Of a stretch of DNA of 64,000 nt, positions 31,433 through 47,600 are shown in pieces. Where the stretch lies: NCBI GenBank assembly GCA_907165135.1, contig OU015566.1:3100001-3164000 (forward strand), given 5' to 3'. A program made the translations under genes and the position numbers. How positions within the stretch are numbered: position 1 is the first letter of the stretch; every line of letters begins with the position of its first letter. The stretch comes from Oikopleura dioica (taxonomy: Eukaryota > Animalia > Chordata). The notes beneath the pieces were generated by a model. The model ran no database searches. It worked only from the letters and a program-made list of their open reading frames with translations, and had not been told where the DNA came from.

Positions 31433-33945
31433 GGTTTTCATACACTGGGCCAAGTTCTAGTGTTCTAGACCCTTCCTAGAAGAAATTTCGTCATTCATCT
31501 TTTTTTTCTTCAAAAAGGCGTTTTTCCTTCTCTGGACCTGTTTTCTCTTTAAAATTATCTAAACGCGTCCAAAAACGCGAGCAAATGTATTGCACTGAAA
31601 ACTGTGATAATATGTATGCTGAACACGGAGAATGATTGATGTATAAATATTAACGAGGCGGTAGACGAAAAAATTGCTTGGAGAAGGTTGAAAACGGTTT
31701 CCAGTCACAAATGAGGTTTTAAAAGCATTTTCCCTTCATAAAATCCGATTGCGTCGTGATTGTCTTTAAATTTTTATGGCGCAAATGAAATGGTCAGTTC
31801 AAGGTGATAGAACGTCTAGAAAGATGCTTATTCTTTACTGATAGGCCGGACAAGACGGCCTACCGGTAGTAGGGGCAAGATTCTAACCCTAACAGATATA
31901 CCCCTGATCGAGAATTCCTCGAAGAAACATTTGGATATCATAATCATCCGGGATGAATCATCCCCCTTAACTTCTCATTACACGGGCGCGCGACTAAGCG
32001 CTCAAAACACGGGGTCCAATTATTGGACCACAATGCATTATCCAGCCCCGCGCGGCGCGCCAAATTCAGAGTGTGAAAAACAGCGCTCAGGACTTTTGGC
32101 TCTAATTGACGTTTCCGTCGGGTAAAAAAGCTCGTGAATATATTGCTAGAAAGCTTGAACCCTCTTCTATAAAAGTAAACAATTGTAAATGGAAAAATCC
32201 GTTCCGATTTTTCACCAGAGAACGAAAGAGAAATCTGGCGCAAAACGCCACCACTTTTGAGTTTTCACTCGAAACTTCACAGAGTGGTTCGTTTTTGTCT
32301 TGTCAGCTCACATTACAAAATTCAGGTCAAACAGATAACTACAACGGGAATTACAGGCGGTCAAAGTCCCCGTGGTCCAATCATTGGACCACGTGCATTG
32401 GGAGCCCCTCCCCCGTCAACAATTTTCCTCAAAAACTCGTTGAGAGCAATTTTTGATCATTAAAAATCTAAATTTTTAGCGAAATTGGGACTTTTAGTGA
32501 TTTTTGTCCTTAACCTTAGCCGGTCAAGGTACTCCAATTTTGGATCATGGGTCATTCGATCGCATTTAGCTTCAAAAGTTGAGGAAAAAAATTTTATTTG
32601 AAATTCACTTTGAGGAGTATTTTTCGATCGCCTTTCGACTGGTAGGGGTTTTAACCCGTTTCAGATTGACCAAAATGTTGGCAGAGCCTCATTTTCACGA
32701 GAACTCAAGGCGCCATATATGGCGCCGGGTAATAAAAGGAGGTACTCCATATATGGCGTCCTTTGACCGGTACCCGAGCTTTTTCCCGGCAGCGGGCCTA
32801 TAAATTTTTCTCGAAATAGATGTTATAAAACTAGTTTTTTTTCATAATAATGATAAAATATGATTTTCATCTGGAAAACAAGCAGAAAAAAGCATTATTT
32901 AGCGTTTTTCATCCGAAATCAGTTTTTGACTTTTTCTCGTCAATGATCATCAGCGAGAAAATTTTTTCGGATTCATAATTTCTTGGAATTGATACAATTA
33001 ATCCATGCTTACATTAATAAAAATGATTTTTAATAAATTAATATAAAAATTTTCAGAAAAATTTTGATGATTTCTATTAAAAGCCGCGCGGCGCCATATT
33101 TGGCGCCTCTTGGCCGGTACCCGGAGAAAATCATTTTTGGCCGATTCTCAAACGCGATTTTGAGGGTCTTAGAGTCAAAAAAGACCCCCAAAAATGAAGC
33201 CTCAAAATCGTTTTTTGACCTGAAGAATCCATTTCCGGGGTCAAAATTTTTAATTCCGAAAATCGATTTTTCGAAAATTGTTGACGGGGGGGGAAGTGGT
33301 CCTTAAATAAAGTGCCTGATTATTAAATGAGTGTCTGATTATTATCAAAATGTCTTACTTTTTCGCATGGATGCGTTTGCAAATAAGTCTCGATTCTCCC
33401 GAGCACCCTTGCTTGAAAAATCTCTTTTGGAGGTAGTTCTCTTCCATGATTTCATTCTTCTGATTTTTACTTCTCGTTTTTGCTCACATTGACCTCAAGT
33501 CTTTTCTCATTCTTTGACAGTTATTTTCGGATTTGAACGGCTCAGGTGACTGAGGCCCGAGCAAATGGACTAAGAGAGAGAGAAAAAGTATAATTGTAAT
33601 TAATGTAAGTGACGAAAATGTCGATATTTCTCCGTTTTTGTCTCCGAAGCACAATTATTTCGGTTTTCTTTTTGAATTAAAAAGTGTGTTGAAATTATAA
33701 AAATATAGAAAGAGGGATGAAAGATCCAAATCTAATAATAAATCGGATCCAAGAGGATATACTCCTTGAGTGCATCTTTATTTTTAAGTTTTATCGGCCT
33801 TTTTATCTTATTTTTCTTGGAATCCTCGAAGAGACACTGTATATAAAAATATATAATATATTTCATATATATATATATTATATATTATATATATATTGAT
33901 AAATGATGACATCTCGTCGATAAATGAGTTCGTTTTATTTGCAGT

Positions 33946-33987
33946 GGCTTAACGTTTTCGGAACAGCAAAGTTCCATCATCAGAGCC
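33946..33987 (-). ncRNA. Minimal type I hammerhead ribozyme (inverted pLTR copy)
   Basis: Reverse complement of the copy at 34295-34337 (stem II loop one U shorter). Confidence 0.85.
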
Positions 33988-34294
33988 GAAGTCTTGGAAT
34001 TACTTGTAAACCTTCCAAAAACAGACAAACGTACCTTTTGGTGAAAACTGCAGAACTGATCAAGCTCCCAAAAACAACCATCCCTCCAGATAGTGTTCTA
34101 GAGAATTTAACCCATTAAAAACTCGAAAATTTGTCAGAGGCTCCTACTCAATTTTACGAGTTTTTAATGGGTTAAATTCTCTAGAACACTATCTGGAGGG
34201 ATGGTTGTTTTTGGAAGCTTGATCAGTTCTGCAGTTTTCACCAAAAGGTACGTTTGTCTGTTTTTGGAAGGTTTACAAGTAATTCCAAGACTTC

Positions 34295-34337
34295 GGCTCT
34301 GATGATGGAACTTTTGCTGTTCCGAAAACGTTAAGCC
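34295..34337 (+). ncRNA. Minimal type I hammerhead ribozyme (5' pLTR)
   Basis: GGCU-CUGAUGA-U-GGAAC(UUUUGCU)GUUCC-GAAA-ACGU-UA-AGCC: intact core, stem I GGCU/AGCC, palindromic ACGU stem III. Confidence 0.88.
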
Positions 34338-34370
34338 ACTGCAAATAAAACGAACTCATTTATCGACGAG

Positions 34371-36865
34371 ATGTCATCATTTATCAATTCTTATGGCAAG
34401 CGACATCAAGATTTCAAGTCCTTGGATACTCTTGCAAGTAAATTGCACAGGACCAGGCAAACGCTGCATTTCTTAGACAACTGCGTTTCTGATCAAGTAC
34501 TTCCAATTTTTACCAAAATCCCAATTCAGGTGGTAAAATTTTGTAAATGGGGTCGAAATAAAATTAAGCGGGAACGATTAAAAATTTTAATTAATGAACA
34601 AAAAATCTGTAGTTACAAACTCGAGGAAATTCGAATATTATTCAATGAAAGTCTATCCAAATTTTTTGAGAAAGAAGGTATTGGTTGTGAAAAAGAAAAA
34701 ATGATAATAATTTTAGATTTAGAAAATCGTGCGAGAATCCGAGATGAGGAACGCGACAGAAAAAGACAATTAAAATTCGGCAAATTGAAAATTCAACAAT
34801 CATTTCGGAAACCACTTAAATATGAAGTAAAAAATTTTTCAAAAAAACAAATTCCTACTAATATAATAAACATTCTAGAAAGAGGTTGGAAGGCCCCTCT
34901 TGGGGGGCGACCGCACTCGATAAATTTGCTCCAACAATTTGATAGCCTGATGGGCCATATAATAAAATATGATCAATTTCAACAACTCACACCAATGACT
35001 CAATTTCAGTTAAAAGGCAGATTGACTTCGATTCACGAAAAATTAACTACTTGTTTCGGTAATGACAATAGTAACAGGATGATAAGACAGTATTTACGGG
35101 AAAACAGGGAAAGTGTGTTTGTTTTATCGGACAAAGACTCAGTTATTTTAATTTTGGACCGTTCTCAATACGAGAATTCTATGCATCGAGAATTTTCAGA
35201 TAAGACAAAATTTATTCAATTAAATTCCGATCCAACTGAGGAGGACACTTTGGAAATGAGGCAAAATTTACGCAAAATGGAAAAATTTGCGGACAAGAAT
35301 TTTTCAATAGAAATAAACCGGTTTCGAGGATAAAAGACGCATATGGACTTGGCAAATGCCATAAAGAAACTTTCGAGCAGGAGCTTAATATGAGAACTAT
35401 AGTTTCAGCAAGAAATTCTGTTTGTGAAAATTTTCATAAAAATTTTTTGGCAAAATTATTAAATAATCTCAAAAGCAAATTCTCACTTCGTGGGTCTAAA
35501 GAATTCGGCTTATGGTTTAAAGAGCAAAAATTCAATTTTGATGAAGTTGATTTTGCAAGTTTTGATATAGTAAAACTCTACCCAAGCTGCGATACAACTC
35601 ACCTGATTCATCTCCTCTTGAAAACAATTTATGACGATAATTCGCCATCCAAAATGTTACCTCGATACCGGGATGAGAATAAAAGACTGCTAAGACCAAT
35701 TCCAAAAAATGTTCTCCGACCAGTTTTGGATTCAGTTTTGAAAAAACTAACTGCATTTCGGTTTGCAGACAGAACTTATCGTCAGATATCGGGTCTATCA
35801 ATGGGCGACAGTAGTTCTCCAAAATTAGCGGATTTCTATCTGTTTATGCTTGAGAAAGATAAGATCGAAAAACTTATTTCGGAAAAAGTGATTTTAGGCT
35901 ATAAAAGATTTCTGGACGACACGATTGTCTTTTTTCGACGCGGTTCGTTCGAAAAAGTCAACGAAGTTTTTCAAAATTTGCATGAGTCTCTTAAAGTAAC
36001 TGTTGAAAGGTCAAGTCCTGAAGGGATAAAATTTCTCGACTTTGTGGTCTATCCCTCGGAAACAAACACCCTGCAAATTCGTAATCATCGAAAACACACT
36101 GTTCCAATGAATTTTGTAAATGACATTGCTCCTTTGTCATTGAAAAAGGGTATTCTAACGTCAGAATATAAAAGGGCTTTATATAAACACTCAGATCCGA
36201 AAACCCTGGGGGATGAGTTTATAGAGATAGAGGAGAAATATCTCGCCCAAGAATATCCCTTAGAAATGATCCGTGATGTAGAAAAGGTGGTGAAAGAGGG
36301 AAGGGTTGACAAGAAAGATTGGAAAGAGGAAAAAAGTTTGCATCCAGAGAGGAATTTCACAGTTTCTATCCCCTTTACGTCCCAAAGGGTGTCCCGGATA
36401 ACGAGGGAAATGCGTAAGATTATCTCAACCTTTCTTCCCGAATTCAGCCTACATACGGCGTTGAGAACAGTATCGATGAGAAACACGATTATCTCCAATC
36501 TCTTACCTAAGCCGGAAGAGGAAAAGGCCATTAATGTGGTGTATTCCTTTGTCTGTAGTTGTGGGGAGGAGTATATTGGGGAATCCGAAAATTTACTGAT
36601 GAGAATTCGCGACCACGGGCAAAAATCAAAAGATACAGCTGTATACGCACACACTCAGTCATGTGAGCTTTTTCAGACAGGATTTAATGAAAAGTATCAG
36701 CAAAATAACCCGAAGTCCCGGTTTGAATATCTCAAATCGAAATTTACCCTGCTGCATAAGAATCTATCGTATGACAAACGAAAACAAGTAGAGGGACTTG
36801 AAATTTCGTTGAAAAATCCCAGTTTAAACAAACAGATACAGCATAGGAAAATCTTTATTTTGTAA
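34371..36865 (+). pseudogene. Penelope RT-GIY-YIG polyprotein with one frameshift near 35300
   Basis: YGLGKCHK...RTIVS, SFDIVKLYPS, YRQISGLSMGDSSSP, YKRFLDDT, KFLD; endonuclease VVYSFVCSCGEEYIGES..RI.DH...GLEI...LN. One extra T in the 35300-35304 run would fuse the two ORFs. Confidence 0.9.
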
Positions 36866-37052
36866 TACCAGTCAGAGGCATTGTAAAATTGAGTAGGAGC
36901 CTCTGACAAATTTTCGAGTTTTTAATGGGTTAAATTCTCTAGAACACTATCTGGAGGGATGGTTGTTTTTGGGAGCTTGATCAGTTCTGCAGTTTTCACC
37001 AAAAGGTACGTTTGTCTGTTTTTGGAAGGTTTACAAGTAATTCCAAGACTTC

Positions 37053-37095
37053 GGCTCTGATGATGGAACTTTTGCTGTTCCGAAAACGTTAAGCC
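37053..37095 (+). ncRNA. Minimal type I hammerhead ribozyme (3' pLTR)
   Basis: Identical to the 34295-34337 motif. Confidence 0.88.
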
Positions 37096-37158
37096 ACTGC
37101 AAATAAAACGAACTTATATATATACTTATTATATATATATTATATATTTCAGTCTTAA

Positions 37159-37894
37159 GGGACCCGGTTAGGTAGCGCCGCGCCGAACTTCAAGCGCTCG
37201 CCGTTATTCTTGCGAATGGGATTTTTCAAATTTTTTTTTTGCAAATGATATCTACAGCTCTTCAGCTTTCTCATTCAGTTTTCCGTTTTTCTCTATCACC
37301 ACTCATTGATGAGATAGATTAAAAAAGGGGATCGCAACTTCAAAAGGCATCAAGTCCTGCAAATTTTATTTTATCTTTTTGAAACCTGCACCATTAAAAA
37401 GCGCATGAAATTCTCTACAGATTCCACCTAATGCGCAAAGCTGAAACATTACTTATTTCGGATCAAAGGCTGATAAACCAGAGATCTTAGCGCGCTCAGC
37501 ACGGCGCGGCGCGACAGGACGCTATTTTGGGCTCCTGAGACATGATTCCAGCAGGGCGCGCGCTAGGAATTTTTGTTTGTATGACCCGTATCGCTTATTA
37601 GTACTGTTTCAGCTTTGCGCATTAGGTGGAATCTGTAGAGAATTTCATGAGCTTTTTAATGGTGCAGGTTTCTAAAAGATAAAATAAAATTTGCAGGACT
37701 TGATGCCTTTTGAAGTTGCGATCCCCTTTTTTAATCTATCTCATCAATGAGTGGTGATAGAGAAAAACGGAAAACTGAATGAGAAAGCTGAAGAGCTGTA
37801 GATATCATTTGCAAAAAGAAAATTTGAAAAATCCCATTCGCAAGAATAACGGCGAGCGCATGAAGTTCGGCGCGGCGCTACCTAACCGGGTCCC
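37159..37894. mobile_element. 736-bp palindromic MITE with TTAA TSD and GG...CC ends (Kolobok-like)
   Basis: TTAA-GGGACCCGGTTAGGTAGCGCCGCGCCG...CGGCGCGGCGCTACCTAACCGGGTCCC-TTAA; ~300-bp arms. Superfamily inferred from the termini only. Confidence 0.85.
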
Positions 37895-39088
37895 TTAAAA
37901 TGATTTCGCGTCTGAAAATTCTAAACCAATCAAAGTTCCGCATTTGGCCGGTGAGCCAATCAGATTTCGGCAGAAGAAAATTGAGTTTTTATTGCATTTT
38001 TATGACCATTTTTAAATTAAAAATTGTTTATTAATACCTTCATCCGAATTCTAACCCAAATCATACCATAAAGATACGAATTTCTCATCAAATATATCCA
38101 CTCACCGATAAAAGTCGCGAAATTTGAAAGTTTGAAAACTGAAAGATGCATTTCTCTAGCCATCGCGGGCTGAAATTCGGCGTCATTATGAACTGCGATG
38201 GAAAACTCATTTTGCAAAAAGCAAGGAAATAATATCAATCTCGAAAGAGGTTGAGCCTCGAATTAAGGTCACTTGCAAAGGAGAAAAAAAGGTTAAGCCC
38301 TGCGAATTGGCCTTTTTCATAAGTCTGTATTTTGATTTCTTAGATTAATTTATTTATTAATTAAACCACAGGATATCGAGCTGGCAAATATCAATAAGAA
38401 GAAAATCATAGACTCTTCATAAAAATCGATCTGAGGAATTTCTACAATATTTTTCGACACGAAAAATCAGAAAAGCTAAGTTTTCCAAAATCGACAATCT
38501 TGGTCGAAAATTATAATAAAAATCAACAATCTTCCCCAAAAAAATTTTTCATGAAAATTTGAGCCGAAAATCGACTGTTATTTTGACCGTTTGTCTGACA
38601 GACAACCCATGTCTGTTCTCATGAAAAACCTTCAGACATCCCATGCTATGCTTAATTTCCCTCATGATTTCGTCCTTTTTCTTTTCGAAAAAAGAAAACT
38701 CAAGCTTCACAAAGCTAAAAAATGAGCTCGTATCAATCGAGTTTTTATGTTCTTGAGAGCGAAAATGACATCGAGAGTTTGAACGAAGGCTTGTCTTCCA
38801 TCACCATTCAAGAAGAAAAAGACGAAGAAAAAACTGAAAAAGTAGAAGATCTCCTTAGCCGTTTGCAGATTATTTCTGAGAAAGCTACAGTCCTAAGACG
38901 CGCTTTTTTACGGTTGGATTTTATAACTTTTTATTCTGTCGGTCAATTTCGGAGTTCTTGGGCGCAAAATGATCGTCTTGAAAAATAAAAATTTTCCAGT
39001 GCATTACTTTTTTTTCAAAAAGTACCTAATACAACTGATATGAGCAAAAAGAGCGATAAAAAGAGTTTGAGAAAGCCTTTTGAGGTAA

Positions 39089-39182
39089 TTTTACCAGCAA
39101 ATTCATCAGAATGAAAATCTTGAAAATCTCAAAGTTAAAAAAGTACTCAAAAGTACTGATAAGACCAAAAAATACTGATATC
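39089..39182 (-). repeat. Single inverted partial copy of the 122-bp repeat unit
   Basis: Reverse complement reads GATATC...GGTCTTATCAGTACTTTTGAGTACT...TTCTGATGAATTTGCTGGTAAAA, matching unit 3 of the 39727-40140 array. Confidence 0.75.
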
Positions 39183-39726
39183 TTGGCTTTGATGGGGCAA
39201 ATCCGAATGATTTCAACACCAAAACCGATTTTTTTGTCTTCTTCTTTTTCAATTGGTCTCACGTGTATAAGATGGAATTAAATCATCAAATGAAATAAAT
39301 TCTAGCTTAAATGCTAGTAACTCTCATCTGTACTGCGATTTCAAATGAGCGGAAGTTCTCAAGAACCTCCGGAACATTTTATTAGAAAGGTTGATTTTCT
39401 TAAAAATATCTACTTGACGCAGCCGGTGGGCCAGATGAGCCAAAGAAGTAAATAACATACTCGACGTTGCCTTATCATATGGCCATATGCGCTTATTGCA
39501 GCTGTCCTCTCGTATTTAAATTGATCAGAACTCGGAATTTCTCATAGAACAGAATCTTTAACTATTTTTTATTGAAAAAATGTCTGGTGATAAATGTGGT
39601 CATGTTCGAGAAAAAATCTCTTGAAGCCTAATAACAATCGATAAGCCAGATAAAGTCCCATTTTTGACAATCAATACCTTCTTCATTTCGTACAACAACC
39701 TTGTATTTCACTCTTAAAAATTTGTT

Positions 39727-40140
39727 ATATCACTTTTTCCGGGCTTATCAGTAATTTAAGGTACTATTTTTATCGACTTCGAGTTTTGAAAATTTCTCTC
39801 CGATCAATTTGGTGGTGAAATCATTGGAAAGGATGCTTTCAAACTCATGATATCATTACTTCCGGTCTTATCAGTACTTATAAGTACCATCTTATCGATC
39901 ATGATTATTGAGAATTTCTTTCTCGTTAATTTGGTGGTGAAATCAGTTCATTAGATGCTCTCAAACTCGAGATATCGCTACTTCCGGTCTTATCAGTACT
40001 TTTTGGTACTTTCTTATCTATTATGATTGCAGAGGAATTCTTTCTGATGAATTTGCTGGTGAAATCACTCCAAAAGATGATCTCAAACTGAAGATATCGC
40101 TTTTTTTCTTCTTATCAGTACTTTAAGGTACTCTTATCGG
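39727..40140 (+). repeat. Degenerate 122-bp tandem array (3.4 units)
   Basis: Units start at about 39727, 39850, 39972 and 40094; conserved blocks ATATC...CTTATCAGTA, AATTTG(G/C)TGGTGAAATCA and GATG..(T/C)TCAAACT. Confidence 0.85.
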
Positions 40141-40232
40141 AAAAATAATGCATTGGAAAATTTTCATTTTTAACGAGGATCATTTTGCGCCCAAGAACTC
40201 CAAAATTGGTCGACTCTATAAAAAGTTATTAG

Positions 40233-41157
40233 AATCCAACCGCAAAAAAAGCGCGTCTAAGAGAGGAAAATAGCTCATTAAAACTTCGGAACGAGCAGCT
40301 GGAATCGCTGAATTCATCGCTGATTGAAGAGAATCATAACATCAAGTACAATCCTCTTTTTGCGTCGCAAAGTTCGATTGATTCGTTTGAGTCGGAAATT
40401 GACGATCAAGATGAGTTCTGGGACTTTGATGAAAAACTTGGGCTTGGAGTCGAGGTACTCTTTTCGGAGGAAAATTTTTCTAAATGAATGCTAGTGCCGC
40501 CGAAAACGCAGAAATGAAGCGCAAAAGCGATGCACTTACTGTACCAAAATCGTCCCGCAAATCACAGAATTCATTTCTCAGACGGGCGAGAATCACGTGA
40601 TCAGACAAAGCCTCTTCTGTGACTCAAAGAATGTGATCTACTTGGCCACGGTTTTGTCCTAGTTTATATTGTCAGGCTTATTTTCAATTCTTTTTAGTGC
40701 AAGAAATGCAATTTGAGCTCTGTCGGATCTTCAATCAACTTCAAAAATCGCCTTCAAAGCTATAAAAGAAATATTCTTGAGCGAATCGGGGACACTGCCT
40801 TTGAAACTCACATGCGTAAAATTCACTCGAGGTCAGACCCTTAATTTTTGAGCTTATCGATGAAGATTTATTAGGGTAAAAGATCCGCTATCGATTGTGG
40901 AAATTGTGCCGATAAGAAAATACGACCCGCGAACGCATAATGCTTCGCATTTGAGGGCACATGAGACACTCTGGATGAATAGGTTAAATACTCTTGAAAA
41001 AGGATTGAACAAAAGAGAGGAGAAATCAATTTGCTCATGTGTTGATTATGAACGCGAGGAATCCCTTATTTTGAATCATTTGGCAAAGTCAGTGCATGAT
41101 ACTCAAAAAGAACCAAGAAGAAGTCCAAGGAATAAAAAATCTGTGAATTATAAATAA
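40233..41157 (+). CDS. Stand-alone PLE-type GIY-YIG domain protein A (YIG motif altered); first exon not located
   Basis: Exons 40233-40454, 40495-40650, 40698-40831 and 40875-41157 splice to ...C..RCTYCTKIVPQITEFISQTGENHVIRQSLFCDSKNVIYLATCKKCNLSSVGSSINFKNRLQSY...RAHETLWMNRLNTLEKGLNKREEKSICSC... Confidence 0.85.
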
Positions 41158-42019
41158 ATCAAATGTTCAAATATTTGTCTCTTCTTTTTTTGTAAAGCAT
41201 TGTTGCTGTAAAAGATATTCTGCATGTAGATGCTGAGAATAAATTAAGGGAATCGCTTAACTCCGCAACTGGAGCTCGACATTTTTTTTCTCGATAAGGC
41301 CCGCTGTCATTATTGACTGAGATTTCGGAACGGAAAATAAAGTGTAATATAGAGTATTTGCACTGACCTTCCGCACCCTTAGCCAAAAGTAAGTCGCGCT
41401 AATCCCTCTCGGTGGGGGTTGGCACCGAAAACTGTCAGTAAAATCAGACGTGTTTTAGGAGGAAACTTTCTTATAACATTTTTATCCTGATGATATATCT
41501 GCATTTATGACCTGAAAACATCTCTTTATAGGTTTTCGAACATGCAGATTTCGAAAATTTCATTAAAATAACGAAACTCCGACCTTTTTTTGGAGACAGT
41601 CGTTAGAATTTGAGCGAGATATAGCTGAAATAGGGACAAACTAAAAACGCCATGTGAAAAACACATTTAAATTAGTGTGTCCACGAAGATTCAGAAAATT
41701 ATCTCGACGGGAAGGTCTTTTCCACAAAAATTGTCGAGCTCGAGTTGGGAAGTTCTCGGGGCGCGCTCCACTTGGGGAGTTAATAAAAGCACGAATTCAA
41801 TTTGCGAAAAAAAAGGAAACTGCCGCGCTGTATACTGATCCGTCATTTTCCTTTTTAATCGATAAACTTCGACTCTCTCGCGCTACGATTTATACTAGTT
41901 TGAAAAGTGAAACATTCAGGGACATATTGAGAGAAAAAGATGCCGCTTCTTTTTAATAGTTTTTCATATTTCTGTATAATTGTACACTAAAATTCGTTTA
42001 ACCCCTTCAAATTAAGAAA

Positions 42020-42955
42020 ATGTCGGCGAGCAACGAAAACAATGAGCAGGAACCCATGAAGCAAGTGATATGGGAAATTGAAGATTGGTTTGGGAAAATA
42101 CGTTTTACAGCAGAAGTGAAAGGCGTTATCGTGAGTTAAACAAAATTTTTATTTTCCGATAAAATTATAAATCGACTGCTTAATTTTAATTTATAAAGTG
42201 CCGTAACCCATGGGAAGTTCCAGGAAAAGAACTTTGTACTTATTGCAAAGATTTTGTGCCACAAATCAAAGAATTCATTGTTGACTCGACAGGCGATACT
42301 TACAGACTCACGCAAAATCTTGCTTGCGACCATACTGATGTAGTCTACTACGCTCGGGTTTGTTCAATCATATGATTAATAATAACTTTATCTTAATTTC
42401 TAGTGCAAGCCTTGCAAAAAAGGTTATGTCGGTTTCACGACCGACATGAAATCAAGGCTTGCCGGATACAAGTCAAACATTGTTGCACGACTTGGTCGAA
42501 CAGCAATTGAGAAACACCTGCGTGAGAAACATGCTGAGTAAGTTGAAATAATTATTGAAATGAAAAATATTATTAATTACTATATATTATTATCTTGTTA
42601 CAAAATGTATTGATAAGGTGATTTTTTAAGTTCCGAAAACCCATTAGATCTTTTTGAGATCTTTCCTTTCATTCATTACAAGAAGCACGAAAAGATTTCT
42701 GAGTACAAGGCGCACGAGTCCCTTTGGATGCAACGATTCAAAACGCTGGCAAGAAATGGCGGCGGATTGAATATGCGGCTTGAGAAGGGTACCTGTTCCT
42801 GTCCTGAATATGTTGCTGAGCAGACCCTTCTCTGGGAAATGCAGCAAAAAGAGGAGCCGGAAAAAAACGAGAAGCCAAAAGACGAGAAGAAGAAAAACAA
42901 GCCAAAGAAAGCCAAACAAACAAAAAAATCAGCAAGAAAAACAAAGAAGAAGTAA
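42020..42955 (+). CDS. Stand-alone PLE-type GIY-YIG endonuclease B (motifs intact)
   Basis: Exons 42020-42130, 42199-42357, 42404-42537 and 42631-42955 splice to ...C..LCTYCKDFVPQIKEFIVDSTGDTYRLTQNLACDHTDVVYYARCKPCKKGYVGFTTDMKSRLAGY...KAHESLWMQRFKTLARNGGGLNMRLEKGTCSC... plus a Lys-rich tail. Confidence 0.88.
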
Positions 42956-43330
42956 AAATATCATCAACTGCATCTCCATTTATCATTGTGGACTTTAGAA
43001 TTCCGTGTTTTATTTGTCTGTAAAATCTCTTTGCAAAATAAGGGCGATTTTTTCGTCTTTAAAATAAAAATAATTGAAGAACTTTGATCGTTTATTTATA
43101 ATTGTTTGACTGTAATATTACAGAATAAATTTAAGTTTTCAGGTCTGACAATGTTTTCAGGAGCAAGAAAAGAGATTCTTCAAAGAGGGATCGAAAGTTA
43201 AGAGGGGAGCATAAGTTTACTTATTCAAAGAAAGCACCGCTTTTTGATACAACTTAGTTTTGGGCATGTTTCGTTCCACCACGGAAAAGAGTTTAAATAA
43301 TCATTTTACAAAAGAAAAAAGAGAGAGTCT

Positions 43331-44644
43331 TCAGTAGAAAACATGATCATTCGCCGGCGCCGGTATCTTTTCCGGAAGAAACGCCGGGAGCGGAGATCCC
43401 TCTCCAGTCGGAGAGATCAATTCAGGGTTGACGCAGAGAAGTCGGTAGTTTTCGCCGTCGTTGTTGTCCCAGAACTCGGTGTCGTTGGCGGCGTAGCAGA
43501 TGCAGAACTCGATTGTTTTCGTGGAATCGTAGTTTTTCGGGATCGAAGTGGTGAATTTGAACGTATTTGTCCTGAAAGAAAAGGTCAGTTTTGACAGGTT
43601 AAAAGATAAGGATGTCTCTGTAATCTAAAGCGCTACAAGCTGCTCGACAATCTGGTTACCGCCCCTTTTGAATTTTTGTCTCTCTAAAAATTGGAATTCC
43701 AAATTTGACAGTTAGACTCAATTTGAAAACGTGGTTCTATCGAATCAGATAAAGCCATAATATTTAAGAGCGCTTGTTTAGATAAGCAAAGACATCAAGG
43801 CTGGGGATTTATTTACCATTCTCCTTCGTAAGCGTTTCGAATATAAGTCGCCTCCACATCGCTGAACGTCTCCCAGCCATCGAATGAGATACGGACTGTC
43901 ACGTTCTTTTCAAACGCGATGTTTTTAACCTTAATTTTCATTTTGGAAATTTGGCTCAAAAGATGAAATTTTACCTTTATAGTGCCAAGAATTGTGCGGT
44001 GTCGAATAACCATGTTTTCTAGGGAGACGTTTTGCTCATCAACTTTTCTCTAAAAACAAGTAAAGAAGGAGTGCCGCGAAATTAAGGGTGTATACCTTGA
44101 ATTTTAAATAATCCGACATTGGTTGAGGAAAGCAGATTTCAAAAGTCTTCGGCCTCGGAGTGGTCTCAGAAGGAATCGCCAATCTGAGTCGCTCTAGAAC
44201 TGCTTTTTCGGAAGGTCGGGGGAGGCTTGGTTCGTCGGGTTTCTCTGTGAAGATTTTTTCTGAACGAGAACTTGAAGGAGGAAGAGAAGGGGGAGTGGCT
44301 TACCTTTGCAAAGTGGTTTTCCGTGGTCGTCAGCAAACGTGACTTTTCGCTCCTTCGTTGTTTTACTTTTTCTAATTGGTTTTGGCTTTGATTGTTGGGT
44401 GTTTAGCGCCATCTGGATCTGGAGGAAAAGGTTGAAAATGAAAAAGGAGGATCAGAAAACTTACGGTATTGTACAGCTGTGTTGCTTTGGCGCTAGGAGA
44501 AGGAGCAAAAGATTTGGTCCTTGGAAGATGTCGATGGCGCTGGGGCTTGTTGTCGAGAAGGGACGGACTGAGGTCGAACATCGACGCGGTTAACGCCTTC
44601 CATTCGGGCGAGTGCGAGATGAAACACGCTACGTCGGCGGGCAT
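43331..44644 (-). CDS. PPP1R3: Protein phosphatase 1 glycogen-targeting regulatory subunit (PPP1R3 family, CBM21)
   Basis: RVxF motif RKVTFADD; FPQPMSDYLKF, GTIKVKNIAFEKNVTVRISFDGW, IEFCICY...FWDNNDGENY. Confidence 0.92.
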
Positions 44645-47600
44645 CTTTTCGCTCCTGAAAATATCCTTGAAAATTGCAATACAACAGAATCAAAATTACT
44701 CATTTATTCAAATTTTAGCGCCTTTTATCGATGTTTTTTGACATCCCAACTAATAAAAGAAGATTAAAAATAAAAATAAATTCAATTCTTTTACGTAACA
44801 GGTCGGCAAATTCTAGAAAAATGCAAAAAGAAAGTCTTTTTTTGATGAAGATTCGAGTTTTTCTGATGATTCATCATCAAATCCTAAAAAAACCAGCCAC
44901 TTAGTCGTAGCAAAGTGCTAGCTCCGTGGTATAATTAAAACGCATCTGTAGAAAAAATGCTTGTCGCGCTAGAACTTGACTTCTTTTTAGAGAGGATAAC
45001 GTCGCCTTAGGAGCTGAGAAGCTATCTCTCTTTTGCGACACGTTTTTGATTCGTTCACGTTACTTTTGAGCGCAAGCGGGTTATTTATGGACAATCATCA
45101 TAATTAGTCTTGCCGTCCTTCATTCCAAAAAAGAGGTCTAAAATTGGAAGATATTGTAACTGGAAAAAGGGGGTGGGGCGATTCTTTGAACCGCCCGGTT
45201 AGAGCTTATGAAATCAGTTTTTAGCAACAACAAGAAGTTATTTTAAGGGAAATAATTCAAATTATCAAATACGTTCTCCAATAAAAGATGAACAAATTTT
45301 CAATTATCGATAATCAAAATGTAATGAGACGATAATTGTCCAAAAATTCGATGATTTTGTACATTTTAAACGATAAAAGGGGTATTTTAATGGAGAATGT
45401 TTATATTTCAATGACTTTAAATGCCTTGATTAGGGGATTTTTTGGCCGTAAAATTTGAAAATTAAGGGTTTACCTGTCGAAGTATTTAATTTTGCCTGAT
45501 TTTTATGAACCCTCTTTAAAATAAGCTCTCTCTTTTTTCAGATATACTTTTGGAGAATGCCTCCTTATATCTTTTTTTTTCTCTTGATTTTCGTCTGTAA
45601 AAGCTTATATTTTTCAATTTTTTACGCTTTTACTTGATCAGTTTTCGGGTCAAAACTCGTAACTGTCAAAAAATCAGCGTCTAAAAAGCGTCTTTTCAGT
45701 AAAGCGGAAAGAGAGAGAGAGCGATTTTCGCGTTCCTGGCTTGTTCCAGGGTCGAGATTTGGTGGCGCCCGCGGGTAAAACCAGAACCGTCATGAAACAA
45801 GTGCTAATTACGGGACCCCGTAAACAGGAAAATAAATTGTGGAGTGCTCTTTCACCGAGACCAATTAGAAATTAATGTTTTAAGAAAGTCATTTGAATTT
45901 TAATAATATAGAATTTTTTTTAAAAATTAGATTTGCTTTTCGATGAAAAAAAAAGAATTTAATTTTTGAGCACAAAAAATATATTTTTGAATTTTGTTGC
46001 AAAAATAAATAAAAAGAGCTTTTTCGAATAAAAAAGCCATGAAAAGATAATTTTAATAAAAAATCAAGAAAAAAATAATTTACCTCAAAGACTGAACTTT
46101 CGCCATTTTCAATAAAAATTCTCTTTTTCTCTCCGAACGAAAAAATAAACAGCCGTTTACGGTATGATAAAATCTCGCTTTGAGAAATGAACTTTGAAAG
46201 AACTCAAAAAACCTCAAAAATTTCACAAAATTAAGCGTGGCGTCATTTTCCGATTTTCATCGCGCGTACAAGTGTTTCGAACTTTGGCGGGAAGGGCAGA
46301 ATCGAGGGCGTGAATCAACCCTCTGGGCAAAATTTTTGAAAGGAGAAATTTTGAATTTGACGATTTAGGGACTTACAGAGGTATTCTCATTTTTCGTCAA
46401 AAACAAAGTTTTTCTTTTTCAGTAAATCTCTTAGGAACCGATTTGATCTCTATGGATTGGTTGTAAAAATGGTCAAAATCATTGAAGTCATTTTGAAGTA
46501 CGTTTTAAAATCATTAAATTGTTTGAGTGAAAGCGGGGCCCAGGGCTGGCTAGTGGCCAAACTGCGGCTTGCCCGGGACCCAAGGGCAGCAAATAATTGT
46601 CAAGTGATTAGGACCCACTCCAACGCAATTTTCTGAGAAGCTAGGTCTCTTTCTTAGTATAAGAAAATAATTTTTTTTTATTTTTTTAGTCAATCAAATT
46701 TTGTAAATTCATTTTTGAGTCAATAAAAAAAAGAAATTTTCTGATAAACTTTTAAATTTACCTTTTGTTTAGAAAATAATATTGATGCGTTTTCTTGAAT
46801 CGGGTGATTTTTCTTATTACTGATATTTTTTCTCGCAAATCAAAATGGAAAAAAACAAATGACTAAAGGAAATGATCCCCTTGAAAATCAAATCCCAAGT
46901 GGCCACTTGTTGGCGCTTGGCCCACGTCAGGCCCGATTGGAATCACACATGCGTGCCTGCTGATTGTTATGTAACCAGCAGGCGGCGCACCTGTGTCCGC
47001 GAAATTTGAAATTATTTCTCTCAGAAGCAATGCAATTTTTTCAACCCTATCCATCTTACGGTCTCTAACCGCACCAGAAAATAGTTAAAACAGACCATTT
47101 TGTTGATTCTGAATTACCATTGTGAGACCCTTAAAAATAATGCTCATTTTTTAGTTCATAAAAATTGAATTTTCTTCAAAATGAAATATAAGTCAGTGAA
47201 ACCCTTAAATTTTTGTATCAATCAAAGAAAGGCGATTATATAAAATGATCCGTCAATTTTTTTCGGGGAGACCCTTAATTTGGGAAATTTTTATAGGAGA
47301 TTTTTTTCTTTGAAATCAAGGAAGACTACTCCCGGAAACCCCCCTTTTCGACGCCAAAATTTTTACCTGCTAATTCTCCTAACTCTTCTGTTTCTGATTG
47401 GTTTTGGTCCAACTCCAACAGAATGCGGCATTCTCTCTCTTTTAGATTTTCGTTGTTGAAGAAAAGGGAAGAGAGGGGATGATCCGATTTTATCGATTTT
47501 GATTAAAAGCTTCGTGCGACAACTGAAACAGGATTTTGGTCCAAAATCTTCTCTTTGATTTTCAGCTCATTCGACACGAATCTCACTTGTCTGAAAATGC

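What the first reader, a model, noticed from the sequence alone, without database searches (positions are those of the whole stretch)
40233..42955. Tandem pair of intron-containing, RT-less Penelope-type GIY-YIG nuclease genes, one intact and one altered
Seen: two co-oriented genes, not captured by the ORF track because introns split them, share C-x10-CTYC-x4-PQI.EF...TG...C...V(I/V)Y-x3-CxxC...VG...R L..Y...HE.LW...GLN.R.EK..CSC. All three internal intron positions and phases are identical (before the first Cys, after the VIY/VVY strand, after the H-x-x helix). Gene B keeps YVG, Arg, Glu and Asn; gene A has SVG instead of YVG and carries an N-terminal coiled coil. Both end in basic tails. No RT, pLTR or transposase is attached. 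Established: the TG..Y.I...C...VIY...CxxC..YVG layout with an upstream Cys cluster is typical of Neptune-type PLE endonucleases, and the second Tyr is a catalytic residue in GIY-YIG enzymes. It differs from the CxC-type EN of the neighbouring Penelope at 36.5 kb, so these genes are not derived from that copy. Inference: a domesticated nuclease family, possibly an active/pseudo-nuclease pair acting in genome defence, repair or rearrangement, or cargo of an unrecognised mobile unit.
Basis: partly seen in the sequence, partly recalled or inferred. Interest (0 to 1): 0.86.

Follow-up and report, generated by a model that had tools for sequence, protein, structure and literature searches.

The report
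Host genes derived from Penelope endonuclease
Two neighbouring Oikopleura dioica genes encode a DNA-cutting domain that came from a Penelope-like retrotransposon but has lost its reverse transcriptase; one is kept by selection in several related plankton lineages, which would make it a rare, apparently unreported case of this transposon nuclease becoming a host gene.

Summary
The window is O. dioica OKI2018_I69 chr1. A and B are 39% identical (E 7e-46) and share three GT-AG introns at identical positions and phases.

Both belong to a small RT-less family. Its profile matches the C-terminal endonucleases of RT-bearing Penelope-like ORFs at about 1e-20. It has the PLE hallmarks: a CxxC between GIY and YIG plus two His, and an upstream Cys linker. 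Structure neighbours are animal RT/GIY-YIG proteins and I-TevI, not SLX1, ANKLE1 or UvrC.

Gene A has relatives in Bergen O. dioica and at least five other marine lineages. None has an RT, pLTR or hammerhead nearby. dN/dS is about 0.06-0.08, and one relative has a spliced transcript.

Corrections:
- Gene A starts at 38722.
- In this genome its first exon carries a 1359-bp inverted-repeat insertion with a 5-bp duplication. A GT-AG intron (38890-40232) could remove it in frame.
- The Tyr-to-Ser change recurs in partner-less orthologues, and RT-linked PLE nucleases carry Gly there, so the "pseudo-nuclease" reading is weak.
- B is known only from this genome and looks like a fast-evolving but constrained duplicate.
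- "Neptune" cannot be told from Nematis or Naiad.

The parts
38722..38889 (+). Gene A exon 1: ATG and N-terminal 56 codons, MSSYQSSFYVLESEND...EKAT.
   Evidence: tblastn with the N-terminus of relative P0012 finds it. It is 75% identical in DNA to the start of the Bergen orthologue. Reading frame checked.
38890..40232 (+). Putative intron 1 of gene A in this genome. A GT...AG of 1343 nt that would remove most of the insertion in frame, replacing Val-Leu by NPTAKKARL.
   Evidence: Frame arithmetic and sequence. Splicing itself is not shown. Annotated model g813 instead starts from a 7-nt exon at 39580.
38898..40256 (.). 1359-bp inverted-repeat (foldback/MITE-like) insertion in gene A's coding exon. 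It holds a 122-bp tandem array at 39737-40139 and is flanked by the 5-bp direct repeat CTAAG at 38893-38897 and 40257-40261.
   Evidence: Inverted arms of 113 nt and 98 nt at 77-80%. Tandem array. The Bergen locus L006 and Tara contig L009 read straight through the site with one copy of the target.
40233..40454 (+). Gene A exon 2. The ancestral coding sequence resumes at 40257. It encodes the leucine zipper L-x6-L-x6-L-x6-L and the acidic EFWDFD motif.
   Evidence: Translation. Weak coiled-coil Pfam hits. The zipper register is conserved in P0012, P0019 and spZ.
40495..40650 (+). Gene A exon 3: Cys linker C-x11-CxxC, a fourth Cys, and the GIY strand (NVIYLAT).
   Evidence: HMM E 6e-26.
40698..40831 (+). 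Gene A exon 4: CKKC, SSVG (Ser codon 40719-40721 in place of the YIG Tyr), Arg, and the His pair HMRKIH.
40875..41157 (+). Gene A exon 5: AHETLW (Glu), GLNKR (Asn), the family-specific CxC..YERE motif, a basic tail and the stop codon.
42020..42130 (+). Gene B exon 1: ATG and a short N-terminus. It is homologous only to the acidic motif at the end of A's exon 2 and has no zipper.
   Evidence: HMM E 4e-6.
42199..42357 (+). Gene B exon 2: Cys linker and GIY strand (DVVYYAR).
42404..42537 (+). Gene B exon 3: CKPC, GYVG (Tyr codon 42425-42427), Arg108, and His128/His133.
   Evidence: Pfam GIY-YIG 24.7 bits, above the 22.6 cutoff on the whole protein.
42631..42955 (+). Gene B exon 4: Glu164, Asn182, the CSC motif, a Lys-rich tail and the stop codon.

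Best explanation
A and B are host genes whose nuclease domain descends from the GIY-YIG endonuclease of a Penelope-like retrotransposon, of the kind that carries a Cys-rich linker upstream of the catalytic core. The reverse transcriptase and terminal repeats are gone.

Gene A is the conserved member. It has a leucine zipper, an acidic motif, a basic Cys linker, a GIY-YIG core with an embedded CCHH site, and a C-terminal CxC helix. It occurs once per locus in several marine lineages, presumably appendicularians, and is under strong purifying selection.

Gene B is a 5'-truncated tandem duplicate. It arose in the O. dioica lineage after that lineage gained its three introns. B has diverged fast but kept the metal ligands and catalytic residues.

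Inferred, not shown: the proteins are nuclear, zinc-stabilised DNA-binding nickases or endonucleases that act on host DNA, and A dimerises through its zipper. In this individual, A's first exon is interrupted by a transposon that may be spliced out as a new intron.
For: Identity of the genes: B equals annotated g814 and A equals g813 plus an upstream exon.

Homology to PLE endonucleases:
- The family HMM matches the C-terminal EN of RT-bearing ORFs from metagenomes at 1e-20 to 1e-22 over about 140 residues. L014 has an RVT_1 match at E 7e-6, 26.4 bits, just under the 29.6 cutoff.
- The CxxC between GIY and YIG, the His pair and the linker Cys residues align. Craig et al. 2021 (PMC8557442) define these as the PLE-EN hallmarks.
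- ESM Atlas structure neighbours are HTH_animal + RVT_1 + GIY-YIG clusters, TM about 0.70-0.71.
- An AF2 model with pLDDT 89.6 matches animal GIY-YIG or RT-domain proteins in AFDB at E 1e-10 to 1e-8, and I-TevI in the PDB.
- Phage and group I intron endonuclease models score only 1e-4 to 1e-2.

Family tree: the family is monophyletic, 97/97 and 98/98.

Host-gene behaviour:
- The Bergen orthologue P0019 has the same three introns.
- OKI versus Bergen: 77% amino-acid identity, pN 0.14, pS 0.73, dN/dS about 0.06-0.08.
- Transcript L005 is 100% identical to genomic contigs L025/L026, which carry introns of 534-775 nt.
- No RT was found in the window flanks or in ten related loci. No hammerhead. 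No framing repeats.
- Only g813 and g814 turn up from the OKI proteome, and only one protein from Bergen.

Origin of B:
- Its three introns match A's exactly, while spX, spY and spZ have none at those exact sites.
- Both maximum-likelihood trees put B next to O. dioica A.
- B keeps 41 of 54 A-invariant columns, against 27% identity at variable columns (Fisher p = 4e-9).
Against: - No expression or splicing data exist for either gene in this genome. The g813/g814 models are AUGUSTUS predictions with RNA-seq hints, and g813 skips the zipper.
- B has no known orthologue, so its selection regime is only inferred. Its position in the tree is unresolved: support is 65/41 and 39/32, and AU tests reject nothing.
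- Synteny could not be used, because the flanks of the Bergen and OKI loci share nothing.
- The other lineages are unidentified metagenome contigs. Calling them appendicularians is an inference.
- dS is saturated, so the ratio is approximate.
- The direction of descent (transposon to host) rests on the family's narrow range and on a tree rooted by a very long branch.
- No biochemical activity is shown.
Confidence: 0.75

Rival explanations
1. The genes are the stand-alone endonuclease component of a mobile element not yet recognised. This could be a split or non-autonomous Penelope-like element, or a large Terminon-like unit whose RT lies elsewhere.
For: Stand-alone endonucleases with both Cys motifs accompany Terminons in rotifers (PMC8557442). 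PLEs can carry and spread intron-containing genes (PMC3846280).
Against: No RT was found within the contigs of ten related loci, or in the window outside the known Penelope. There are no hammerheads and no repeats framing A, B or the pair. The neighbouring Penelope ends at 37121 with its own repeats and has an unrelated CxC-type endonuclease. There is one copy per locus, with strong purifying selection between lineages.
Confidence: 0.07
2. The direction is the reverse. The larvacean family represents a cellular, zinc-finger-bearing GIY-YIG nuclease of the kind from which Penelope-like elements acquired their endonuclease.
For: Craig et al. note that a free endonuclease with both Zn motifs would explain how PLEs gained their endonuclease, and that none had been found among homing endonucleases. 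The tree is effectively unrooted, since its only outgroup has a branch of about 7 changes per column.
Against: The family was found only in a handful of closely related marine lineages, out of 1.8 billion representatives. Linker-bearing PLE endonucleases occur across animal phyla. In the rooted tree the family nests among RT-linked endonucleases, with L013 as sister at 95/93.
Confidence: 0.08
3. In this genome the pair is partly decaying. Gene A is a null allele broken by the insertion, and B is a drifting, lineage-specific duplicate without function.
For: The 1359-bp insertion sits in A's coding exon. The annotators' model does not join exon 1 to the rest of the gene. B has no orthologue in any database searched and has the longest branch in the family.
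Against: All A exons remain open, with canonical splice sites, and an in-frame GT-AG pair spans the insertion. B is open, its divergence avoids the conserved columns (p = 4e-9), and it keeps every Cys/His ligand and catalytic residue.
Confidence: 0.1

Closest known systems
GIY-YIG endonuclease domain of Penelope-like elements with the upstream linker (Neptune, Nematis and Naiad clades; NCBI cd10442 as described in PMC8557442)
   Same: GIY-YIG core. CxxC between GIY and YIG plus two His (CCHH). A Cys linker upstream ending in CxxC. A conserved Cys before GIY. Arg, Glu and Asn. Profile similarity of about 1e-20 to RT-linked examples, and the nearest predicted structures.
   Different: No RT, pLTR, hammerhead or dispersal. 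The linker is widened to C-x9/11-CxxC by a basic insert. Added features are a leucine zipper, an acidic motif and a C-terminal CxC..YERE helix. Spliceosomal introns differ between lineages. The family is under purifying selection as a low-copy gene.
Stand-alone endonucleases associated with Terminons in bdelloid rotifers
   Same: RT-less proteins with both the CX2-5CxxC and the CCHH motifs (PMC8557442).
   Different: Those lie inside giant Athena-type mobile elements and carry large unique insertions. No sequences were available here, so the relationship was not tested.
Catalytic domain of homing endonuclease I-TevI (PDB 1LN0, 1MK0)
   Same: Best solved structural match: TM 0.72-0.77 by target, probability 1.0. 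Same beta-beta-alpha-alpha-beta-alpha core and catalytic Tyr/Arg/Glu/Asn layout.
   Different: 14-16% identity. I-TevI has no Cys pair inside the core and no upstream Cys linker. It is a phage intron-encoded enzyme.
Cellular GIY-YIG nucleases SLX1, ANKLE1 and UvrC
   Same: The same superfamily fold.
   Different: UvrC matches poorly (E 0.4-2.7, TM by query 0.26-0.30). SLX1 and ANKLE1 do not appear among the 50 best PDB rows or the 30 best AFDB rows. There is no RING, ankyrin or LEM domain.

Membership tests
GIY-YIG superfamily (Pfam PF01541) | Profile match above the curated cutoff | tested here: met
   B scores 24.7 bits against a 22.6 cutoff. Relatives P0012 and P0020 score 31.1 and 29.8. 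O. dioica gene A itself falls short: 17.3 bits for g813 and no hit for Bergen P0019.
GIY-YIG superfamily (Pfam PF01541) | Catalytic Tyr (GIY), Tyr (YIG), Arg, Glu and Asn | tested here: inconclusive
   B has all five: Y87, Y98, R108, E164 and N182. A has Ser for the YIG Tyr, as do Bergen, L009, L028 and L031. No activity was assayed.
PLE-type endonuclease domain | CCHH motif with both Cys directly between GIY and YIG | tested here: met
   C91-x2-C94 and H128/H133 are invariant in the family and align with the CxxC of RT-linked endonucleases. Definition taken from PMC8557442.
PLE-type endonuclease domain, linker-bearing clades (Neptune, Nematis, Naiad) | Upstream CX2-5CxxC Zn-finger-like linker | tested here: inconclusive
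   The three Cys align with the linker of RT-linked endonucleases. The first spacing is 11 residues (9 in spZ), outside the published range. No curated clade references were available to tell Neptune from Nematis or Naiad.
Penelope-like retrotransposon (the element) | Endonuclease fused to a PLE reverse transcriptase in one ORF | tested here: not met
   tblastn with four PLE RT queries finds nothing in the window outside 34371-36529, nor in L001, L002, L006, L007, L008, L010, L025, L028, L031 or L032.
Penelope-like retrotransposon (the element) | pLTR-type terminal repeats and hammerhead ribozyme motifs | tested here: not met
   No hammerhead at E up to 5 in 32000-47000. No direct or inverted repeats frame A, B or the pair.
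Penelope-like retrotransposon (the element) | Multiple dispersed copies with target-site duplications | tested here: inconclusive
   Only g813 and g814 from OKI and one protein from Bergen appear in the protein databases. Whole genomes could not be scanned with these tools.
Domesticated transposon gene | Orthologues in several lineages under purifying selection | tested here: met
   For gene A, OKI versus Bergen gives dN/dS of about 0.06-0.08. Open reading frames occur in at least five further lineages. For gene B this was not testable, as no orthologue is known.
Domesticated transposon gene | Conserved chromosomal position (synteny) | tested here: inconclusive
   The flanks of the Bergen locus and the window share no similarity beyond the gene.
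Domesticated transposon gene | Expression as a spliced host mRNA | tested here: inconclusive
   Shown for relative spX: L005 versus L025/L026. No transcript data were available for O. dioica itself.
SLX1 / ANKLE1 / UvrC | Closest fold and accessory domains (RING, ankyrin-LEM, UvrBC-binding) | tested here: not met
   Fold searches and Pfam.

The most novel reading that the evidence does not exclude
This is the first documented domestication of a Penelope-like-element endonuclease. Under this reading it is a conserved appendicularian nuclear nuclease that still nicks or cuts DNA and serves the host in transposon control, repair or rearrangement. In O. dioica it was duplicated into a Ser-variant zipper protein (A) and a fast-evolving, catalytically complete paralogue (B). 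In this individual, A would be caught in the act of turning a coding-exon transposon insertion into a new intron.
Probability: 0.3. Interest if true: 0.8.

Novelty: new variant of a known kind. Interest (0 to 1): 0.6.

Why it matters
Penelope-like elements are linked to one major host gene, telomerase, through their reverse transcriptase. For their endonuclease I found no reported host-gene descendant. A study of rotifer PLEs looked for exapted ORFs and found none (PMC3846280), and no paper in the searched library links GIY-YIG to Oikopleura or larvaceans.

A low-copy, selected, RT-less descendant gives several things:
- a tractable protein for studying how the PLE endonuclease and its two zinc motifs recognise DNA;
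- a candidate nuclease in an animal with an unusually compact and rearranged genome;
- a natural series (Tyr, Ser, Gly) at a supposedly essential catalytic position.

The interrupted first exon of gene A is also a possible live example of intron gain by transposon insertion in a larvacean.

Tried and rejected
- Exon-by-exon Pfam gave only one weak GIY-YIG hit. The whole protein was needed.
- Word-indexed protein searches with B, with a relative of A, and with the family alignment found only family members and no PLE fragments. RT-linked relatives came only from the metagenome DNA scan.
- The first AF2 model, built from 5 sequences, was unusable at pLDDT 43. It was replaced by a 16-row alignment.
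- A sequence search of the PDB found nothing meaningful.
- I considered the ORF MHWKIFIF... at 40148 plus an A7 frameshift as gene A's start. I rejected it once the real exon 1 and the inverted duplication were found.
- I considered precise removal of the insertion at its CTAAG repeats by splicing. None of the six possible registers gives a G*-AG intron; this follows from the sequence.
- A first dN/dS run used a wrong frame and was discarded.
- An excess of OKI-specific changes in A (29 versus 6 and 13) is not evidence of relaxed constraint, because the lineage relationships are unknown.
- I could not identify the sample behind transcript L005.
- Earlier-findings look-ups by sequence were blank.
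Full report
**What is there**

The window is Oikopleura dioica OKI2018_I69 chromosome 1. Splicing gene B at the GT-AG sites visible in the sequence gives 242 residues (exons 42020-42130, 42199-42357, 42404-42537, 42631-42955). These are identical to the database protein Oidioi.mRNA.OKI2018_I69.chr1.g814.t1.

They are also bounded by GT-AG introns, of 40, 47 and 43 nt.

A and B are 39% identical over 192 residues (E 7e-46). Their three shared introns lie at the same residue and phase, and the exon between the last two introns is 134 nt in both.

A 321-residue relative, P0012, comes from an intronless Logan contig (L005). It has about 60 more N-terminal residues. tblastn with that part finds an ATG exon at window 38722-38889.

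The Bergen O. dioica orthologue is P0019: 313 aa, locus L006, four exons, with three introns at the same sites as here. Tara contig L009 carries another orthologue. Both read straight from this exon into the next one.

DNA alignment shows that the window carries about 1.36 kb extra at that point. The extra DNA is 38898-40256. It has imperfect inverted arms (113 and 98 nt at 77-80%) and an internal 122-bp tandem array at 39737-40139. It is flanked by the direct repeat CTAAG at 38893-38897 and 40257-40261, where the uninterrupted lineages have a single target.

This is a transposon-like insertion into the coding exon, placed exactly at the first Leu of a conserved L-x6-L-x6-L-x6-L zipper.

A GT at 38890 and the AG at 40231-40232 would remove most of it in frame, changing Val-Leu to NPTAKKARL and leaving the zipper intact. 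Whether this happens is unknown. The annotated model g813 (P0021, 234 aa) instead begins at a 7-nt exon inside the insertion, at 39580, and skips the zipper. The annotation was made by AUGUSTUS with RNA-seq hints (PMC8008620).

**What the domain is**

- Pfam GIY-YIG passes its cutoff on B (24.7 against 22.6 bits) and on relatives P0012 and P0020. It does not pass on O. dioica A.
- A profile of the last exon, run against 1.84 billion representative proteins, found only nine hits, all family fragments.
- A metagenome DNA scan with the family alignment returned one more copy of the Bergen-type gene and fourteen loci of a different kind.
- At least three of those loci are long ORFs in which the related domain is C-terminal. 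L014 carries a sub-cutoff RVT_1 match upstream of the nuclease (E 7e-6). L011 and L017 carry upstream sequence alignable with L014's by eye.
- The family HMM matches these endonucleases at 1e-20 to 1e-22 over about 140 residues.
- In the joint alignment the conserved columns are the linker Cys residues, a Cys before GIY, the CxxC between GIY and YIG, the VG of the YIG motif and the Arg.
- Craig et al. 2021 (PMC8557442) give the CxxC-inside-the-core CCHH motif as the mark of PLE endonucleases. They give the upstream CX2-5CxxC linker as the mark of Neptune, Nematis and Naiad.
- The family's linker is widened to C-x11-CxxC (x9 in one lineage) by an insert that is basic (RRKRR-like) in the A-type proteins.

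Structure agrees. The ESM Atlas neighbours of B's model are clusters carrying HTH_animal, RVT_1 and GIY-YIG (TM about 0.70-0.71). An AF2 model from the 16-row alignment (pLDDT 89.6) matches animal GIY-YIG or reverse-transcriptase proteins in AFDB at E 1e-10 to 1e-8, over residues that include the linker. In the PDB it matches the I-TevI catalytic domain. UvrC matches poorly, and SLX1 and ANKLE1 are absent from the listed hits. Phage and group I intron endonuclease profiles score only 1e-4 to 1e-2.

The neighbouring Penelope at 33895-37121 has its own terminal repeats and sits in a (TA)n tract. Its CxC-type endonuclease is not detectably related to the family (HMM E 2.7).

**Host gene or mobile element**

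- No RT similarity exists in the window outside that Penelope, nor in ten related loci of up to 21 kb.
- Rfam finds no hammerhead between 32 and 47 kb.
- No repeats frame A, B or the pair.
- The protein databases hold two members from OKI and one from Bergen.
- Between OKI and Bergen, gene A is 77% identical in protein, with pN 0.14 and pS 0.73. This gives dN/dS of about 0.06-0.08, with dS saturated.
- In one relative (spX), transcript contig L005 is 100% identical to genomic contigs L025 and L026, which carry introns of 534-775 nt. The gene is therefore transcribed and spliced there.
- In trees of the nuclease domain the family is monophyletic: 97/97, and 98/98 without the very long outgroup. 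It lies beside RT-linked endonucleases.

Together these results fit a domesticated descendant of a PLE endonuclease much better than a mobile unit.

**Origin and state of B**

The three O. dioica intron sites are not shared by the other lineages:
- spY (L007) has no intron in the nuclease region.
- spX has one intron, 6 nt away from intron 2.
- spZ (L001) has one intron 5 nt away from intron 1, and another at a different place.

Three identical sites in A and B therefore point to a DNA-level duplication within the O. dioica lineage. Both maximum-likelihood trees put B next to O. dioica A. Support is weak, however, and AU tests reject neither placement.

B lacks the zipper. Its first exon is homologous only to the acidic motif before the linker. 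B's branch is long, yet it keeps 41 of 54 columns that are invariant among A-type proteins, against 27% identity at variable columns (Fisher p = 4e-9). No B orthologue was found anywhere, and the 10 kb downstream of Bergen A hold none.

**The 'altered' copy**

Ser in place of the YIG Tyr is shared by three O. dioica lineages: OKI, Bergen and L009. It also occurs in two other lineages, L028 and L031. spX, spY, spZ and B have Tyr. Three RT-linked endonucleases (L011, L012, L014) have Gly at this position.

On the tree, Ser arose at least twice. The position is evidently tolerant in this branch of the superfamily, so an 'active plus pseudo-nuclease pair' is not supported, although it is not excluded.

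**Mechanism**

Shown:
- the domain architecture;
- the conserved ligands (C38, C50, C53, C80; C91, C94, H128, H133 in B);
- the conserved catalytic Arg, Glu and Asn;
- the conserved zipper in A-type proteins;
- the basic linker insert or basic tails.

Inferred:
- two structural zinc sites;
- nuclear localisation;
- dimerisation of A;
- DNA nicking like that reported for the Penelope endonuclease (cited in PMC3846280), now directed at a host task.

**Literature**

No paper in the searchable library connects GIY-YIG with Oikopleura or larvaceans, or reports a domesticated PLE endonuclease. Transposon-derived introns in larvaceans are discussed in PMC11282704 (abstract only). UniRef labels the Bergen protein only as 'GIY-YIG domain-containing protein'.

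**Verdict**

The finding is real and its main interpretation is right. The claim to keep is 'a selected, RT-less host-gene family derived from a linker-bearing PLE endonuclease, tandemly duplicated in O. dioica'. Gene A's structure needs the correction given above. The pseudo-nuclease and mobile-cargo ideas are downgraded.

Noticed in passing
window 38898-40256: A 1359-bp inverted-repeat element with an internal 122-bp tandem array and a 5-bp CTAAG duplication, inserted in a coding exon. A GT-AG pair (38890/40232) could remove it in frame, so it is a candidate transposon-to-intron conversion. No second copy of its terminus occurs in the window.
   Followed up: partly
window 33895-37121: A Penelope-like element with two ORFs (34371-35333 and 35390-36865; weak RT and CxC-type GIY-YIG matches). 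It has 215-nt direct repeats at 98% and 190-nt inverted repeats at 100%, and it sits in a (TA)n tract. It looks recently inserted, although PLEs are reported as almost absent from this assembly (PMC8008620).
   Followed up: partly
window 37155-37898: A near-perfect palindrome with 341-nt arms at 93% and a 62-nt spacer, lying between the Penelope and gene A.
   Followed up: no
window 41259-41754: A MITE-like pair of 29-nt inverted repeats (86%), 438 nt apart, in the A-B intergenic region. It overlaps a 100-codon ORF at 41654-41956 that has no convincing family match.
   Followed up: no
L011, L012, L014 (metagenome loci): RT-linked PLE ORFs whose endonuclease has Gly (QGVG/QGIG) where the YIG Tyr should be. 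The second Tyr is therefore not universal in apparently intact PLE endonucleases.
   Followed up: partly
L001 6253/6583; L025 858/1634; window 40454/40495 and 40650/40698: Introns in different lineages lie 5-6 nt apart from the O. dioica sites, next to the first linker Cys and next to the core CxxC. This could be intron sliding or independent gain at neighbouring sites.
   Followed up: partly
window 39580-39586: Annotated gene model g813 appears to start from a 7-nt coding exon (ATGTCTG) inside the inserted element, spliced to 40330. This skips the leucine zipper.
   Followed up: partly
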